From assembly GCF_947568905.1 (NCBI RefSeq), contig NC_079168.1, positions 71,362,001 to 71,426,000 of the forward strand: a stretch of 64,000 nucleotides of DNA. Direction: 5' to 3'. The stretch is from Ostrea edulis. Its lineage: Eukaryota. This document shows, in pieces, positions 33,150-43,347 of this stretch. Position numbers and translations under genes: made by a program. Below the pieces are notes generated by a model that was given only the letters and a program-made list of their open reading frames with translations, had not been told where the DNA came from and did not search any database. The stretch's first letter is position 1; every line of letters begins with the position of its first letter.

Positions 33150-36100
33150 CTATGAAGTTTCAGTATTCCAATCACCATAACAGTGCATCAAATTTTCTAA
33201 AGTTTCACATTTTCGAATAACGTTAACTTTGTTGCCATCTACAAGAAGTTCTGCTGGACGCACCTAAAATATAAAAGGTGAATCGATAATGAGTGACAGG
33301 GGCTTGATCCGATCGATTACTATTGTGATTAGCTAGGATCGAAGAATATACTTACTCTCATGTTGTAGTTTGATGACATGCTGCTACAATACGCCCCTGT
33401 GTCAAACACTGCCATACAACAACCTTCATTTGGGGTCACAAACTGACGATCCTGTAAACATTAGAAAGGACACATTGTAGACAAATAATTAATAGTCAAT
33501 TCTTGACTAATCTTAGCCTGCAGGGGCGGATCCAGGAATTGTGGTTACGGGGGGCGCCACTTTACGGGGCAGTGGGTCCAGGGCGAAGCCCTGGTGGGAG
33601 TCCAGGGGGCGAAGCCCCCGGAAGTTCCTGGATTTTACAGATTTTACGGGGCTTGAAATATTTCTCCTATTAAGTCTTTTGTACTATTTTCTATCATTTT
33701 AATAAAGTGAAAGTAATAAAATGATCCAAATTTTAAGAGGTTTTTGGAAAAAATTAAGTTCTCCCAATAAATTATTCAAGAAATCAAAGGATTTTGTCAT
33801 TTATTTTTCCTTGAGTGGAAGAAATTATTGCTTCTTTTATCGTTTAGTACATTTTCCGAAACAAGATACAGCGATTTACCTTAAATTCGAAAAGTTTAGG
33901 GGGGGGGGGCGGCTGCACCCCCTCTAAATCCGCCACTATTATATATATATATATATATATATATATATATATATATATATATATATATAAACGAAAACTT
34001 CATATAAATACATTTAGCATTACAACTACACTAATCTACAAACGTATTTACAACGCAGACTACATGTTTTTTGGTTTTTAGGCTTGCCAATCAATGTTAA
34101 AAGCGGAGCGAATTATGATATGCCTTATTCGTCGAGAGCTGATCCAAAATGTACGAAGTGATAAAAATAGACTTAATTAATCTCAAGTGGAACGAGTTAA
34201 CCATATTACGTTGACAAGGTTGTTCGTGTCGTTGGTCATTTTAGTGCTTTGTATAATTTTTTGTATTTGACCTTGTATCCATGTTGAGGATCCGACACTT
34301 TTAGGTATCGGGTGTTGTTGGAACTTAGTGCTTATATATATAATTCAATAAAAAAAACCAAAAAACCAATTTCAATTTTTGTATTCACCTGAGGCTGGAT
34401 GTTAAAATCCAGAAAGCGCTAGTGATTTAAATATATTTTGGAACTGCATATTTTCCTGCTTTTTTATTGAATTATTTTGACTATGTGATATCTACTCTTT
34501 CTATATATATATATATATATATATATATATATATATTGGGATAAATCTCCGATATAATCTTCTAGAGTGCTCGACGTGGCCTCACGGAGCTACATAAATT
34601 GACGATCAGATGGAGTTCAATCACATAACATTTATTTCTCTACAGGCTGTTTCGTGAGGGGATGGTTTCCCCTCACTCGTCGGGAGAAAAATGACATCTA
34701 ACGAAAAACATCCGCGTGGCTGAGAATATGTTACACAGAAACATACTGGATAGTTGCTAAGCATGATTACACACAGGATTGAGTAAATAGAAATTTATGG
34801 GAATGACGGCAAGTGCTGACAAGTTCTGAACGCTTATTCAATGAAGATTTTTCGGGATGACATATTATAAAGAATTTCTCTAGAATACAGAGGTTGCACT
34901 TTTTTGAAATGTTTGAGTATGATGATGTTTTTCCTAAAATTTCCCACTTGATTTTGTAGTCAATATTTTTGTCTTTCAATGTCCATATGAATTTGCTGAG
35001 CTCGGTGGTATTCTTTTTCGTGGAATTACGGAATGAATGAGTGTGGTTGGCGTATCTTAATTTGAACTCGGTGTCTGCTAGTCCCACGTAGCTCTCTTCT
35101 TTTTGCTACGTGGGACTAGCAGACACCGAGTTCAAATTAAGATACGCCAACCACACTCATTCATTCCGTAATTCCACGAAAAAGAATACCACCGAGCTCA
35201 GCAAATTCATATGGACATTGAAAGACAAAAATATTGACTACAAAATCAAGTGGGAAATTTTAGGAAAAACATCATCATACTCAAACATTTCAAAAAAGTG
35301 CAACCTCTGTATTCTAGAGAAATTCTTTATAATATGTCATCCCGAAAAATCTTCATTGAATAAGCGTTCAGAACTTGTCAGCACTTGCCGTCATTCCCAT
35401 AAATTTCTATTTACTCAATCCTGTGTGTAATCATGCTTAGCAACTATCCAGTATGTTTCTGTGTAACATATTCTCAGCCACGCGGATGTTTTTCGTTAGA
35501 TGTCATTTTTCTCCCGACGAGTGAGGGGAAACCATCCCCTCACGAAACAGCCTGTAGAGAAATAAATGTTATGTGATTGAACTCCATCTGATCGTCAATT
35601 TATATATATATATATATATATATATGTCTCTTTTTTTTCGAAGTAAATCAATTTTTTTTTAATCTAAACACTTTCTTGAAATATACTACTCAAAATTTGA
35701 TAAGGATCATAGCTATTTTTCTGTTTAAAAAAAATTAATAACTGCATAACTGGCAATATTGTGTCCAAGTGAAATCAAAAACGTCTTCAACAAACTTGCA
35801 CGTGCATTTCATGCCATGGGAAATGCGTTTCTCATCACAGTTTATGCTTTTGCTACCATTACACGATTTTCACTCAGGCATCGGTGTCTGATTCTTTCTA
35901 AAATTTCAAACTCACTTGAGTGTTTACACTACGTTTATCAACACAATGCCCCCTCAACGTGTAAGGCGTCGCCTGACGACAGAACAACTGGGCAGATGTA
36001 TTGGAATGCTTGACGCTGGCTATTCACAACGTGACGTTGCAAATACACTAAAAGTCAGCCAGAGCGTTGTAAACAGGGCCTGGAACCGACAGCAAACTTT

Positions 36101-42100: not shown

Positions 42101-43347
42101 ATACATTTGGAGATGAATCGTCTAAATATAGAAACAAAGCTCAGGTAGATATAGACAAAAAGGTCAGCTAAAAATAGACATAAAGGTCAGCTCAATTTAG
42201 GCACAAAGTTCAGCTAAATATAGACACAAAGGTCAGACATGTAGGAAGCGATCCAGAATATTTGAAAATAATAAGAACAAACTACATAACATTCTCGGTC
42301 CAATATTTGCTTGATATCAGAATCTAACCGTGCGTTACGACAATGAATCAAGATTTACGGCACATAGATACATGTAGTTTGTGAATGGATTTAGACGAGG
42401 TCAACCTCAAGCTTTAAAGTTGCATTATCATCATACATGTAGTAAAATACATTCTATTCATTATTGCGCTTGGGGTCATGTATGAAAATTTAGTTAATCT
42501 CTGATAACCAGCATCAGCAGCAGGGTGCCTACTCAACATATAAATATTATCATTACAACACTTGATAGAATTTGATAACTTAAATAAATAAACTTTTTAA
42601 ATGGATCTACATCTACGTGCGTGTTAGATGTTAAAATGCAAAGTTACTTTTCCATGTTCATTTCATTTTATAGTGTTTCATATTAGCATGGAAATTAATG
42701 ATTGATAACAACTGCGAAAAAATTGGTGTGCAAGAAATGAACTATGTGTCCCCTCCCCCCCCCCCCCCTCCCCCCCCCCCCCCCCCTATACAGTTAGTTT
42801 ATATTTATCTGAACATTACCGGATTGATGTCGGGGTTGATCCTTAGCAACACCTGAGCCACATATCCCCTCATTTGACACACCCGTATGGTTTGTCGCAG
42901 GTTGAACATGCTATCGACATTAACCAGAACACCCGATCTGCATGCTAGATCCACCTCCCAATCTAACTTCCCGTTACCGTTTAATACAATGGTGTTTGGT
43001 TCGAACCCAAGTTCCAGGGCGAGCTGGAGCTCCAAACCACTGACTAACGTAAGAGATAACCCGTGATCCTTCATTATCTTCAGAATAGCGGGATTCATAT
43101 TGGCTTTCACGGAATAGTTGAGCTGTATGACGCGCCCCGTTTTCTTTATGGCTGTCTTGTACTCGTTAATATTGGTTTCCATTTGTCGTTTGCTGTACAC
43201 ATAAACAGGTGACGTAATATTATTTTCAGAAACTTTAGAATTCAGTAAATCACAAACACTTATCTCCTCACAATACAAGTGATCTTCAACATATCTGAAG
43301 CCATCATTCATTTGATAGTTCTTTGCTTGCAGAGAAAAGGTTTCCAT
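33150..43347 (-). CDS. lysA: Diaminopimelate decarboxylase-like protein (fold-type III PLP enzyme, ~508 aa), 9 coding exons
   Basis: Exons 43347-42820, 41212-41049, 40693-40585, 40226-40126, 39227-39137, 39036-38882, 38611-38443, 33451-33356 and 33263-33150. All are GT-AG and in phase, 1527 nt. Motifs YSVKAN (PLP Lys), [56 protein letters not shown] (rather than CD) favours DAP over ornithine decarboxylase. Confidence 0.92.
33521..33938. mobile_element. MITE (caggggcggatcc...atccgccact); a second copy is at ~56553-56968
   Basis: Imperfect terminal inverted repeats and ~400 bp of clear homology between the two copies. Confidence 0.75.
34385..34425 (+). ncRNA. Hammerhead-like motif with core deviation (A9 to C)
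   Basis: TCAC-CTGAGGC-TGGAT-gttaaa-ATCCA-GAAA-GCGCT-A-GTGA. Confidence 0.55.
34635..34689 (-). ncRNA. Mirror copy of the same hammerhead, on the lysA sense strand
   Basis: Reverse complement of 35508-35562 within the palindrome. Confidence 0.75.
35508..35562 (+). ncRNA. Minimal type I hammerhead ribozyme (U4C core variant) in PLE 3' region
   Basis: Stem I TTTCTC/GAGAAA; core CCGACGA; stem II GTGAGGGG/CCCCTCAC; GAAA; stem III ACAG/CTGT; predicted cleavage GUA at 35556. Confidence 0.75.
35684..37253 (+). mobile_element. Tc1/mariner DNA transposon, near full length, inside a lysA intron
   Basis: 26-bp TIRs at 35684-35709 and 37228-37253 with 1 mismatch; TA on both sides (35682-3, 37254-5); uninterrupted transposase ORF. 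Confidence 0.93.
35946..36986 (+). CDS. Tc1-family transposase (HTH plus DDE/D domain)
   Basis: ATG at 35946 ([10 protein letters not shown]...). Motifs [41 protein letters not shown]. Confidence 0.9.
   Translation: MPPQRVRRRLTTEQLGRCIGMLDAGYSQRDVANTLKVSQSVVNRAWNRQQTFGTAAHRHGGGRQRSTTQRQDHFVAPQARRHSFWTATSLRNDLLDASGVNVSTQTIRNRLHSAGLNSRRACVRIPLTVRHRRERLDWAEDHVTWTHNDWVQVLFTDESRYCLDFTDKRYRVWRRQRERFHAANISEHDRYGGSSIMVWGGISRDGRTDLHVLERGTMTGVRYRDEILDVYVRPYAGAVGPEFIMMDDNARLHRARVVEQYLQQETIVRMDWPARSPDLNSIDHVWNMLQVALSRRRAQPTTLAELGNAPVEEWNNLPIGNIRVLIDSMARRCQAIIDARGDHTRY
37309..38001 (+). repeat. Two tandem ~350-bp units with a hammerhead (retrozyme/PLE pLTR-like)
   Basis: Unit starts near 37311 and 37664 (ttacatta.gacccc.gggtcgaggcctctgctggtgg...). 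The second hammerhead is partly deleted. Confidence 0.8.
37592..37644 (+). ncRNA. Minimal type I hammerhead ribozyme in tandem retrozyme-like repeat
   Basis: CTGAAGA (37602-37608), stem II GAC/GTC, GAAA, palindromic ATGCGCAT, AUC triplet. Stem I is imperfect (gcatca/tggtac). Confidence 0.75.
38147..38413 (-). mobile_element. SINE, same family, in a lysA intron
   Basis: 9-bp TSD agtacaatg at 38138-38146 and 38414-38422. Confidence 0.85.
39297..40136. repeat. 19-bp minisatellite (gagtgctatacctgtggtt), ~44 units, in a lysA intron
   Basis: Read directly; variation is confined mostly to 2-3 positions per unit. Confidence 0.95.
41784..42063. mobile_element. MITE with 5-bp TSD
   Basis: TIR CAGGGCCGTAA / TTACGGCCCTG; ataaa on both sides. 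Confidence 0.75.

What the first reader, a model, noticed from the sequence alone, without database searches (positions are those of the whole stretch)
33150..43347. Intron-rich, apparently intact lysA (DAP decarboxylase) in an animal genome
Seen: all catalytic and PLP motifs are present, including DAP-type IRP.LY and CES, across 9 spliced exons, so this is not bacterial contamination. Established: animals lack the DAP lysine pathway, and lysA has been reported as a horizontal acquisition in a few animals. No other pathway gene lies in this window. Inference: a filter feeder could convert meso-DAP from digested bacterial peptidoglycan into lysine, or remove DAP-type immune ligands.
Basis: partly seen in the sequence, partly recalled or inferred. 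Interest (0 to 1): 0.72.

Follow-up and report, generated by a model that had tools for sequence, protein, structure and literature searches.

The report
Ancient intact lysA gene in a mollusc
This mollusc chromosome carries an intact, nine-exon gene for the last enzyme of bacterial-type lysine synthesis (diaminopimelate decarboxylase) with none of the earlier pathway genes; it is an old gene shared by many invertebrate phyla, not a recent bacterial import, and may let bacteria-eating animals turn a cell-wall amino acid into lysine.

Summary
A minus-strand gene runs from the ATG at 43347 to the stop at 33150. It has 9 GT-AG coding exons and encodes a 508-aa fold-III PLP decarboxylase of LysA (meso-DAP decarboxylase) type.

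- **Identity.** It keeps 57 of 58 columns that are at least 90% conserved in non-animal LysA. These include the PLP lysine, GGG, EPGR, RPxLY, CES and GAY motifs. Its exons tile NCBIfam's lysA equivalog. Its 70%-identical Saccostrea orthologues pass that model's cut-off and fold like Arabidopsis DAPDC.
- **Not ODC.** The genome has a separate ODC gene.
- **Not contamination.** The introns hold animal transposons and the neighbours are animal genes.
- **Not a recent transfer.** Orthologues occur in bivalves, gastropods, a chiton, a brachiopod, an annelid, amphioxus and acorn worms. All 8 introns are shared with scallop and Lingula, and 5 with amphioxus and Ptychodera.
- **Rest of the pathway.** dapB and dapF were not detected, and the only DHDPS-family hits are HOGA1-like and sialate-lyase-like.
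- **Expression.** Four RNA-Seq runs hold part of the 3' end. A related species has a spliced transcript.

The most likely role is a stand-alone cytosolic DAP decarboxylase that salvages lysine from bacterial DAP; this is inferred, not shown. Public annotation already names such genes in other molluscs, but I found no paper that characterises them.

The parts
42820..43347 (-). Coding exon 1 (528 nt, aa 1-176). Holds the start ATG at 43347-43345 and the PLP-binding lysine K81 in YSVKAN.
   Evidence: Pfam PF02784 E 1.8e-17. TIGR01048 104 bits over profile positions 21-153. 18 homologous ORFs from other organisms all end at this same donor site.
41049..41212 (-). Coding exon 2 (164 nt). Holds H179, the SKFG motif and the HCHIGS motif (H217/H219).
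   Evidence: AG/GT boundaries. TIGR01048 55.7 bits, profile positions 157-208.
40585..40693 (-). Coding exon 3 (109 nt). Holds the GGGLG phosphate-binding loop (G257-G261).
   Evidence: TIGR01048 20.1 bits, profile positions 212-244.
40126..40226 (-). Coding exon 4 (101 nt). First half of a 64-aa insert absent from bacterial and plant LysA.
   Evidence: Found by comparison with Saccostrea proteins. The intron position and phase are shared with Mizuhopecten and Lingula.
39137..39227 (-). Coding exon 5 (91 nt). Second half of the insert. Exons 4 and 5 together are 192 nt, so skipping both would stay in frame.
   Evidence: In the AF2 model of the orthologue P0182 the insert forms four helices with block-mean pLDDT about 75-91.
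38882..39036 (-). Coding exon 6 (155 nt). Holds the EPGR motif (E357-R360).
   Evidence: TIGR01048 22.4 bits, profile positions 270-301.
38443..38611 (-). Coding exon 7 (169 nt). Holds IRPCLY (R396, Y400) and GPVCES (C431, E432).
   Evidence: Pfam PF00278 E 7.4e-09. TIGR01048 52.2 bits, profile positions 304-355.
33356..33451 (-). Coding exon 8 (96 nt). Holds DTGAY (G458-A459-Y460) and SNYN.
   Evidence: TIGR01048 33.9 bits, profile positions 356-387.
33150..33263 (-). Coding exon 9 (114 nt including the TAG stop at 33152-33150). An AATAAA lies 35-40 nt downstream at 33115-33110 and is only a candidate poly(A) signal.
   Evidence: Four RNA-Seq runs hold 0.52-0.60 of the sampled words of 33020-33263.
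39302..40136 (-). 19-nt x 43.9-copy minisatellite filling intron 4. It starts in the last 11 nt of exon 4 and repeats that exon's 5' splice site.
   Evidence: TRF. Sequence around the exon 4 donor.
34591..35606 (.). Perfect 502-nt inverted repeat inside intron 7, with 12 nt between the arms. It is a mobile-element remnant.
   Evidence: Identical 106-aa ORFs on the two arms.
35916..36986 (+). Open 356-aa Tc1/mariner-type transposase ORF inside intron 7.
   Evidence: Pfam HTH_Tnp_Tc3_2 E 1.9e-16 and DDE_3 E 2.6e-11.

Best explanation
This is a single-copy nuclear gene of the mollusc. It encodes a fold-type III, PLP-dependent diaminopimelate decarboxylase (LysA, EC 4.1.1.20 type).

Shown here:
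- The gene is intact and intron-rich.
- It sits among ordinary animal genes.
- It is orthologous to genes across Mollusca and other bilaterian phyla, with shared introns.
- It retains essentially every residue conserved in LysA.

Inferred:
- The protein lacks an N-terminal transit peptide, so it is probably cytosolic.
- Like other DAPDCs it should act as a homodimer. K81 would carry the PLP. R396 and Y400, plus E432 from the partner subunit, would hold the L-centre of free meso-DAP. C431 would protonate the D-centre after CO2 loss, giving L-lysine.
- The genome showed no dapA, dapB or dapF. The substrate would therefore have to come from bacteria that the animal eats or hosts, which makes this a one-step lysine salvage route.
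- A lophotrochozoan-specific 64-aa, four-helix insert (exons 4 and 5) sits between the GGG loop and EPGR. Its role is unknown.
For: - **Gene model.**
- **Family.** PF02784 and PF00278 hit the exons. For exon 1, PDB sequence hits favour DAPDC (Arabidopsis 6e-29) over ODC (5e-4). Orthologues P0182 and P0020 score 371 bits on the TIGR01048 lysA equivalog (cut-off 297.9), against 167-170 on DokD (cut-off 700). Seven window exons tile that profile and sum to about 305 bits.
- **Residues.** 57 of 58 columns at least 90% conserved in 63 non-animal LysA sequences are kept. The one change is F to Y.
- **Fold.** The AF2 model of P0182 has pLDDT 90. Its best PDB match is Arabidopsis meso-DAPDC, with TM 0.94 by target.
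- **Age.** Named orthologues occur in many phyla. Tree support is 97/81 for molluscs, 98/93 for bivalves and 100/100 for the oyster-like clade. Introns match 8 of 8 with Mizuhopecten and Lingula, and 5 of 8 with Branchiostoma and Ptychodera, in the same phases.
- **No pathway.**
- **Animal context.** KY-like, CUB and Jiraiya neighbours, and transposons in the introns.
- **Expression.** Four RNA-Seq runs hold the 3' end. A related species has both a genomic exon-1 ORF (P0006) and a spliced product (P0183, 47 member sequences, 1579-nt contig).
Against: - No enzyme activity, substrate or tissue data exist.
- Splicing in this species itself was not seen. The four runs I laid were genomic DNA, and the RNA evidence is word sharing only, from one study.
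- Free meso-DAP has to be released from peptidoglycan peptides. I found no Peptidase_S66 (LD-carboxypeptidase) in the genome and did not search for other releasing enzymes.
- The 64-aa insert is absent from every characterised DAPDC and could change specificity or regulation.
- One sequenced individual carries E393V in the conserved MTEVIRP stretch.
- The roles I give to R396, Y400, C431 and E432 come from my memory of the DAPDC structure literature, not from a tool.
Confidence: 0.6

Rival explanations
1. Neofunctionalised LysA descendant. The enzyme keeps the fold but works on another substrate. Candidates are D-ornithine or D-lysine, lanthionine-type DAP analogues, or DAP still bound in muropeptides (turning DAP-type immune ligands into Lys-type ones). 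The lophotrochozoan insert would provide the new specificity or regulation.
For: - A structured 64-aa insert lies next to the GGG loop and is unknown in characterised DAPDCs.
- The gene stands alone without the pathway.
- Relatives such as DokD, BtrK and FslC show that this fold changes substrate readily.
- Hemichordates carry a paralogue that has lost catalytic residues, so the family does diversify in animals.
Against: - Scores pass the lysA equivalog cut-off and fall far below the DokD and FslC cut-offs.
- R396, P397, Y400 and E432 are invariant, and C431 nearly so, across 40 animal, plant and bacterial sequences.
- Deuterostome orthologues lack the insert yet keep the same residues.
Confidence: 0.2
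2. Recent horizontal transfer of a bacterial or algal lysA into this mollusc lineage, as reported for sap-feeding insects.
For: - Animals as a whole lack the DAP pathway.
- The nearest non-animal relatives are Chloroflexi/Poribacteria-type bacteria and plants or algae, at about 40% identity.
- A coral study listed DAPDC as an Anthozoa transfer from chlorophyll-c algae (PMC4878875).
Against: - Orthologues exist in at least eight phylum-level groups.
- The mollusc part of the tree follows species relationships.
- All 8 introns are shared with a brachiopod and 5 with amphioxus and a hemichordate.
- No GTDB genome carries the clade's signature motifs.
- An old transfer before the bilaterian radiation is not excluded, because the deep nodes are unresolved.
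Confidence: 0.03
3. A decaying or non-catalytic relic, such as a pseudoenzyme or an unexpressed gene.
For: - No spliced RNA was seen for this species.
- A non-synonymous variant, E393V, is fixed in the contigs of one run.
- Many animal lineages have lost the gene.
Against: - The 1527-nt frame is open across 9 exons with canonical splice sites.
- 57 of 58 conserved columns are kept.
- Core identity to Saccostrea is 72-75%.
- RNA-Seq runs hold the 3' end.
Confidence: 0.05
4. Bacterial contamination or assembly artefact, or a misread ODC/antizyme-inhibitor paralogue.
For: None beyond the general similarity among fold-III decarboxylases.
Against: - The gene has eight spliceosomal introns that carry Tc1/mariner and other animal repeats.
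- Four independent WGS runs cover the locus contiguously.
- The genome's ODC is a different gene on contig C4.
- ODC hits are more than 20 orders of magnitude weaker than DAPDC hits.
Confidence: 0.01

Closest known systems
Arabidopsis thaliana meso-diaminopimelate decarboxylase 1 and 2 (PDB 6N2A, 6N2F)
   Same: Best solved relatives by both sequence and fold: E 2e-105, 36-38% identity, and TM 0.94 by target for the orthologue model. They share the two-domain fold-III architecture and all catalytic motifs.
   Different: The plant enzymes carry a chloroplast transit peptide and finish a complete DAP pathway. The mollusc protein has no N-terminal extension, stands alone in the genome and carries a 64-aa insert. 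No intron position is exactly shared with Vicia; one lies a codon off.
Bacterial LysA (TIGR01048), especially Chloroflexi/Poribacteria-type proteins of about 413 aa
   Same: About 40% identity over the full length, with the same conserved columns.
   Different: Intronless, with a 31-33-aa GGG-EPGR spacer against 95 aa here. They are part of a lysine biosynthesis pathway.
Horizontally acquired lysA of sap-feeding insects (whiteflies, mealybugs)
   Same: An animal-encoded DAP decarboxylase that completes lysine synthesis from bacterial DAP. In function this is the closest precedent. My description of these cases rests on my own knowledge; the papers appeared only as titles and abstracts (PMC4607527, PMC4943190, PMC10037149) and I did not read them.
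   Different: Those are recent, lineage-restricted bacterial transfers that work with obligate endosymbionts. This gene is old, widespread in bilaterians and shares introns across phyla.
Anthozoan DAPDC listed as an algal transfer (Bhattacharya et al. 2016, PMC4878875)
   Same: A prior report of DAPDC encoded by a marine invertebrate.
   Different: It is only a table entry, interpreted as HGT from chlorophyll-c algae. I did not test its relationship to the bilaterian clade.
D-ornithine/D-lysine decarboxylase DokD and other LysA-derived decarboxylases (BtrK, FslC/FigC)
   Same: Same fold and a similar active-site framework.
   Different: Scores lie far below their family cut-offs (DokD 167-170 against 700; FslC 76-81 against 500), while the lysA equivalog cut-off is passed.

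Membership tests
Diaminopimelate decarboxylase LysA (EC 4.1.1.20; NCBIfam TIGR01048) | Two-domain fold-III architecture: Orn_Arg_deC_N barrel plus Orn_DAP_Arg_deC sheet domain. | tested here: met
   PF02784 hits exons 1 and 2, and PF00278 hits exon 7. Both domains are present on all full-length orthologues.
Diaminopimelate decarboxylase LysA (EC 4.1.1.20; NCBIfam TIGR01048) | Score above the curated equivalog cut-off of 297.9 bits. | tested here: met
   Orthologues P0182 and P0020 (70% identical to the window protein) score 371 bits. Its seven core exons each hit lysA best, tile profile positions 21-414 in order and sum to about 305 bits, which is only a rough sum.
Diaminopimelate decarboxylase LysA (EC 4.1.1.20; NCBIfam TIGR01048) | PLP machinery: Schiff-base lysine, HxH histidine, GGG phosphate loop, EPGR, GAY tyrosine. 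| tested here: met
   K81, H217/H219, G257-G259, E357-R360 and G458-A459-Y460 are all retained. Overall, 57 of 58 conserved columns are kept.
Diaminopimelate decarboxylase LysA (EC 4.1.1.20; NCBIfam TIGR01048) | DAP-specific recognition of the distal L-centre: Arg and Tyr of RPxLY, and Cys-Glu of CES from the partner subunit. | tested here: met
   R396, P397, Y400, C431 and E432 are present and conserved. Their roles are assigned from my memory of published DAPDC structures.
Diaminopimelate decarboxylase LysA (EC 4.1.1.20; NCBIfam TIGR01048) | Three-dimensional fold like solved DAPDCs. | tested here: met
   Tested on the orthologue P0182, not on the window protein. The AF2 model has pLDDT 90 and pTM 0.89. 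Its top PDB hits are Arabidopsis, H. pylori and M. jannaschii DAPDC.
Diaminopimelate decarboxylase LysA (EC 4.1.1.20; NCBIfam TIGR01048) | Catalyses meso-DAP to L-lysine plus CO2 as a homodimer. | not testable with these tools
   This needs an enzyme assay or complementation. A dimer of two 506-aa chains exceeds the size limit of the complex tool.
Complete DAP lysine pathway | dapA, dapB and dapF (or ddh/dapL) present in the same genome. | tested here: not met
   DAP_epimerase gave 0 matches and DapB_C gave 0. The two DHDPS-family hits are HOGA1-like and N-acetylneuraminate-lyase-like. The search works exon by exon, so absence is likely but not proven.
Ornithine decarboxylase / antizyme inhibitor | Closest similarity to eukaryotic ODC or AZIN. 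| tested here: not met
   For exon 1, DAPDC scores 6e-29 against 5e-4 for ODC and 8e-4 for AZIN. The genome's true ODC is on contig C4.
Recent bacterium-to-animal lysA transfer (insect type) | Narrow host range, nesting inside a donor clade, and few or lineage-specific introns. | tested here: not met
   Orthologues occur in many phyla. Intron positions are shared across phyla. No close bacterial relative was found.

The most novel reading that the evidence does not exclude
A stand-alone DAP decarboxylase has been kept since at least the protostome-deuterostome ancestor. It survives mainly in aquatic suspension, deposit and bacteria feeders: molluscs, brachiopods, annelids, acorn worms and amphioxus. 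LysA-like genes of unclear relationship also occur in decapods, lampreys and sturgeons. In this reading the enzyme gives these animals an unrecognised route to the 'essential' amino acid lysine from bacterial cell-wall DAP. The lophotrochozoan four-helix insert would be a lineage-specific regulatory addition.
Probability: 0.4. Interest if true: 0.75.

Novelty: new member of a known kind. Interest (0 to 1): 0.55.

Why it matters
Textbooks treat lysine as strictly essential for animals, and the DAP pathway as absent from them. It is even used as an antibiotic target for that reason. An intact last-step enzyme with conserved catalytic residues, kept across phyla for roughly half a billion years, implies a selected function.

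The simplest candidate function is converting bacterial DAP into lysine. DAP is also used as a bacterial biomarker, so that use would need rethinking in bivalves and other bacterivores, including farmed ones. The same would apply to isotope fingerprinting of 'essential' amino acids.

It also corrects a likely misreading: animal DAPDC genes flagged as lineage-specific HGT may belong to one old animal gene family. The idea is directly testable with a cloned cDNA.

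Tried and rejected
1. **Seven-exon model (444 aa).** It is in frame and contains all motifs. I replaced it with the 9-exon model after alignment to Saccostrea, scallop and Lingula. Skipping exons 4 and 5 (192 nt) would stay in frame, so a short isoform cannot be excluded.
2. **The search for related loci on GTDB genomes.** With the exon-1 alignment, 63 pattern matches came back and none was confirmed. This gave no bacterial donor lead.
3. **Read laying on 38400-44390 with runs X5-X8.** The contigs run through the introns at even depth, so these are DNA runs.
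4. **First run search with exon 1.** It found no RNA holder. The second, with the last exon and 3' end, found four.
5. **Deep phylogeny.** The careful tree leaves the relations among animal groups, plants/algae and bacteria as a polytomy. The AU test does not reject one clade of named invertebrate bilaterians (p 0.151), which is not proof. I did not test inclusion of vertebrates or decapods.
6. **Atlas search.** It returned only generic DAPDC clusters.
7. **Literature.** Six searches pairing DAPDC with mollusc, bivalve, metazoa, invertebrate and deuterostome terms found no characterisation of an animal-wide or molluscan LysA. Searches were poorly designed and say little.
8. **Query error.** A query on L002 hit a stop codon. 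I used the neighbouring stop-free exon instead.
9. **Sponge sequence.** The Ephydatia protein is not evidence for a pan-metazoan gene. It is intronless and groups with red-algal LysA.

Full report
**What is there.** The minus strand between 43347 and 33150 carries one gene. A six-frame reading showed LysA-like peptides in separate frames. Inspecting the boundaries gave a first model of 7 exons and 444 aa.

Aligning that model with proteins found later showed that oyster, scallop, Solemya and snail homologues have about 60 more residues between the GGGLG and EPGR motifs. The matching peptides lie in two short exons that I had skipped.

The final model has nine coding exons: 43347-42820, 41212-41049, 40693-40585, 40226-40126, 39227-39137, 39036-38882, 38611-38443, 33451-33356 and 33263-33150. 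Every internal boundary is AG/GT. The CDS is 1527 nt and the protein 508 aa. It aligns from residue 1 to 506 with Saccostrea echinata XP_ protein P0182 (506 aa) at 70% identity.

**What family it is.**
- Pfam finds the fold-III barrel (PF02784) on exons 1 and 2 and the C-terminal sheet domain (PF00278) on exon 7.
- Against PDB sequences, exon 1 hits Arabidopsis DAP decarboxylase at 6e-29, bacterial DAPDCs at about 1e-13 to 1e-15, and ornithine decarboxylase and antizyme inhibitor only at 5e-4 to 1e-3.
- NCBIfam's lysA equivalog TIGR01048 (cut-off 297.9 bits) is passed by the orthologues P0182 and P0020 with 371 bits. DokD (167-170 against 700), FslC and the arginine decarboxylase models are far from their cut-offs.
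- The spliced window protein could not be submitted by reference, so I scanned its exons singly. Each of the seven core exons has lysA as its best hit. They cover profile positions 21-153, 157-208, 212-244, 270-301, 304-355, 356-387 and 389-414, with a summed score of about 305 bits.
- In an alignment with 63 non-animal LysA-type sequences, 58 columns are at least 90% conserved. The window protein keeps 57 of them, and the exception is F to Y at position 384. The kept residues include K81, H219, G257-G259, E357-P358-G359-R360, R396-P397, Y400, C431-E432 and G458-A459-Y460.
- An AlphaFold2 model of P0182 (mean pLDDT 90, pTM 0.89) is closest to the two Arabidopsis meso-DAPDC structures, with TM 0.94 by target.

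**It is an animal gene, single copy, and distinct from ODC.**
- The window lies on contig C5 of an 895-Mb, 52-contig assembly.
- A genome-wide search with PF02784 finds only this locus and one on C4. The C4 locus is a canonical ODC.
- Flanking ORFs encode three KY-like proteins, a CUB domain and a Jiraiya domain.
- The introns hold an open Tc1/mariner transposase ORF, a perfect 502-nt inverted repeat and a 19-nt minisatellite.
- Four whole-genome runs of the same organism cover the locus contiguously, at about 4 to 100 times depth.
- Contamination and assembly artefact are excluded.

**It is old, not a recent transfer.**
- A word search with exon 1 returned 18 ORFs at 45-70% identity. Every one stops at the same place, just after INPDI(N/D)P. 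That is the exon 1 donor site, so the intron is shared.
- The exhaustive search and a second word search gave full-length relatives. Their sources name the following:

| Group | Genera named |
|---|---|
| Bivalves | Saccostrea, Pecten, Mizuhopecten, Ruditapes, Mactra, Dreissena, Mya, Solemya |
| Gastropods | Haliotis, Lottia, Patella, Batillaria, Lymnaea, Bradybaena, Bulinus |
| Chiton | Liolophura |
| Brachiopod | Lingula |
| Annelid | Owenia |
| Cephalochordate | Branchiostoma |
| Acorn worms | Ptychodera, Glandiceps |
| Decapods | Macrobrachium, Petrolisthes |
| Bdelloid rotifer | Didymodactylos |
| Lampreys | Lampetra, Lethenteron, Petromyzon |
| Sturgeons and paddlefish | Huso, Acipenser, Polyodon |

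- In the IQ-TREE analysis (71 rows, LG+C20), conchiferan molluscs form a clade (97/81), bivalves form one (98/93), and the window groups with Saccostrea and two unnamed relatives (100/100).
- Deeper nodes are a polytomy. They include a well-supported clade (99/94) of plants, green and red algae, and Chloroflexi/Poribacteria-type bacteria.
- An AU test does not reject one clade of the named invertebrate bilaterians (p 0.151).

**Intron positions** give independent evidence. I mapped exact exon chains for eight annotated genes.

| Species | Introns compared with the window gene |
|---|---|
| Mizuhopecten (scallop) | All 8 shared, same phases, including the two that bound the insert exons |
| Lingula (brachiopod) | All 8 shared, same phases, including the two that bound the insert exons |
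| Branchiostoma | 5 shared, same phases (after window residues 176, 230, 267, 382, 471) |
| Ptychodera | Same 5 shared; the one at 267 aligns two residues off |
| Petrolisthes (crab) | None shared; one possibly shared with the deuterostome invertebrates |
| Huso and Lampetra | Three shared with each other, none with the invertebrates |
| Vicia (plant) | None exactly; one lies a single codon off |

[quoted passage not shown] The 9-exon form existed at least in the mollusc-brachiopod ancestor.

Whether that ancestor inherited the gene vertically or took it from a bacterium or alga earlier is unresolved. The motif scan of 185,579 GTDB genomes found no close bacterial relative. The Ephydatia sponge sequence is intronless and groups with red algae (Pyropia, Porphyra), so it is a separate story.

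**The insert.** The GGG-to-EPGR spacer varies by lineage.

| Spacer length | Lineages |
|---|---|
| 31-40 aa | The nearest bacterial LysA group, plants, algae, amphioxus, acorn worms, sturgeon, lamprey |
| 95 aa | The window gene and Saccostrea |
| 88-139 aa | Other pteriomorph and protobranch bivalves, gastropods, chiton, Lingula, the crab, an unnamed clade |
| 47-51 aa | Heterodont bivalves and Owenia |

Within the oyster-like clade the insert aligns without gaps. It is 34-52% identical there, against 70-75% for the core. In the model it forms four helices with block-mean pLDDT about 75-91. Its function is unknown.

**Pathway context.** In the whole genome DAP_epimerase and DapB_C give no match. 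The two DHDPS-family matches are closest to mitochondrial 4-hydroxy-2-oxoglutarate aldolase and to N-acetylneuraminate lyase. The animal therefore cannot make DAP. An LD-carboxypeptidase (Peptidase_S66) was not found either.

**Expression.**
- The runs I laid were DNA.
- A second run search with the last exon and 3' flank found four runs labelled TRANSCRIPTOMIC RNA-Seq ('mollusc metagenome', one study). They hold 0.52-0.60 of the sampled words. With only 3 million letters of contigs per run, chance genomic carry-over is unlikely. This supports transcription but not splicing.
- In a related species the genomic exon-1 ORF P0006 reads on into the intron. It is 98.8% identical to the start of P0183, a 436-aa product on a 1579-nt contig with 47 member sequences. 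P0183 continues across the intron sites. The orthologue there is transcribed and spliced.

**How it most likely works.** The steps here are inferred.
- The N-terminus aligns with the start of the mature plant enzyme and has no extension. I take the protein to be cytosolic.
- By analogy with solved DAPDCs, it should be a head-to-tail homodimer with two shared active sites.
- Free meso-DAP from digested or resident bacteria would bind as a Schiff base to PLP, displacing K81, with its L-centre held by R396, Y400 and E432 of the partner subunit.
- Loss of CO2 from the D-centre, followed by protonation, would give L-lysine.
- The alternative that it edits peptide-bound DAP is less likely, because the residues for the free L-centre are intact.

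**Known or new.** Automatic annotation already calls scallop, Pecten, Lingula, lamprey and paddlefish genes 'diaminopimelate decarboxylase, chloroplastic-like'. A coral genomics paper lists DAPDC as an Anthozoa transfer from algae. Insect lysA transfers are documented (titles). Within the searchable library I found no paper that describes or tests a molluscan or animal-wide LysA.

I file the gene as a new member of a known enzyme family. The new points are that it is ancient in bilaterians, shares introns across phyla, stands alone in the genome and carries a lophotrochozoan insert.

Noticed in passing
window 39302-40136: A 19-nt minisatellite with 43.9 copies and 87% matches fills intron 4. 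It begins in the last 11 nt of exon 4, so the exon's 5' splice site (CAG|GTATAG) is repeated about 44 times. Three units equal 57 nt, which is in frame, and the repeat frames are open.
   Followed up: partly
window 34591-35092 and 35105-35606: A perfect 502-nt inverted repeat (100% complementary, 12 nt apart) lies inside intron 7. Each arm carries an identical 106-aa ORF with no Pfam hit.
   Followed up: partly
window 35916-36986 (+): An uninterrupted 356-aa Tc1/mariner-type transposase ORF (HTH_Tnp_Tc3_2 plus DDE_3) lies inside intron 7 of lysA, possibly a young copy.
   Followed up: no
window 41779-42063: This 285-bp stretch of intron 1 is missing from the contigs of all four whole-genome runs laid, which join 41778 directly to 42064. 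Part of it (41859-42063) is a high-copy repeat. It looks like an insertion polymorphism private to the reference individual.
   Followed up: partly
window about 40280-40430 (intron 3): Summed word depth in the WGS runs is 1e5 to 1e7 in this bin, with many loose ends at 40281-40283 and 40317-40323. This points to a very abundant short repeat family.
   Followed up: no
window 38582, 41183, 40615, 41159: Exonic variants appear in the WGS runs. E393V is the only allele in the contigs of run X7. H186Q appears in runs X6 and X8. Two further variants are synonymous (G257, P194).
   Followed up: partly
P0038 (Glandiceps), with P0243 (Ptychodera) in the same clade: Acorn worms have two LysA paralogues that duplicated before these genera split. 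In P0038 the PLP lysine is Q, GGG is GEG, EPGR is EPGI and CES is GES, so it looks like a pseudoenzyme. I did not inspect P0243 residue by residue; a pattern scan found no EPGR/EPGI motif in it.
   Followed up: no
L012 (Huso huso) and L014 (Lampetra fluviatilis): Sturgeons, paddlefish and lampreys carry LysA-like genes with 4 exons. Their 3 introns are shared between the two fish lineages but match none of the invertebrate introns. Their link to the invertebrate clade is unresolved in the tree.
   Followed up: partly
L013 (Ephydatia muelleri protein P0276): The sponge-labelled LysA is an intronless 1311-nt ORF and groups with red-algal (Pyropia/Porphyra) LysA. It may be a separate acquisition or a non-sponge sequence.
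   Followed up: partly
window 714-1667, 19958-21013, 30699-32568 (all minus strand): Three tandem genes with KY-like immunoglobulin-like domains (PF23265) lie downstream of lysA. A CUB-domain ORF (50772-51152) and a Jiraiya-domain ORF (52996-53535) lie upstream.
   Followed up: no
L017 5834-7468 (protein P0048): An unnamed eukaryote-like 93-kb contig carries an intronless 544-aa LysA with a long GGG-EPGR insert. Its clade (P0041, P0251, P0273, P0199) sits among the animal sequences, and its organism is unknown.
   Followed up: no
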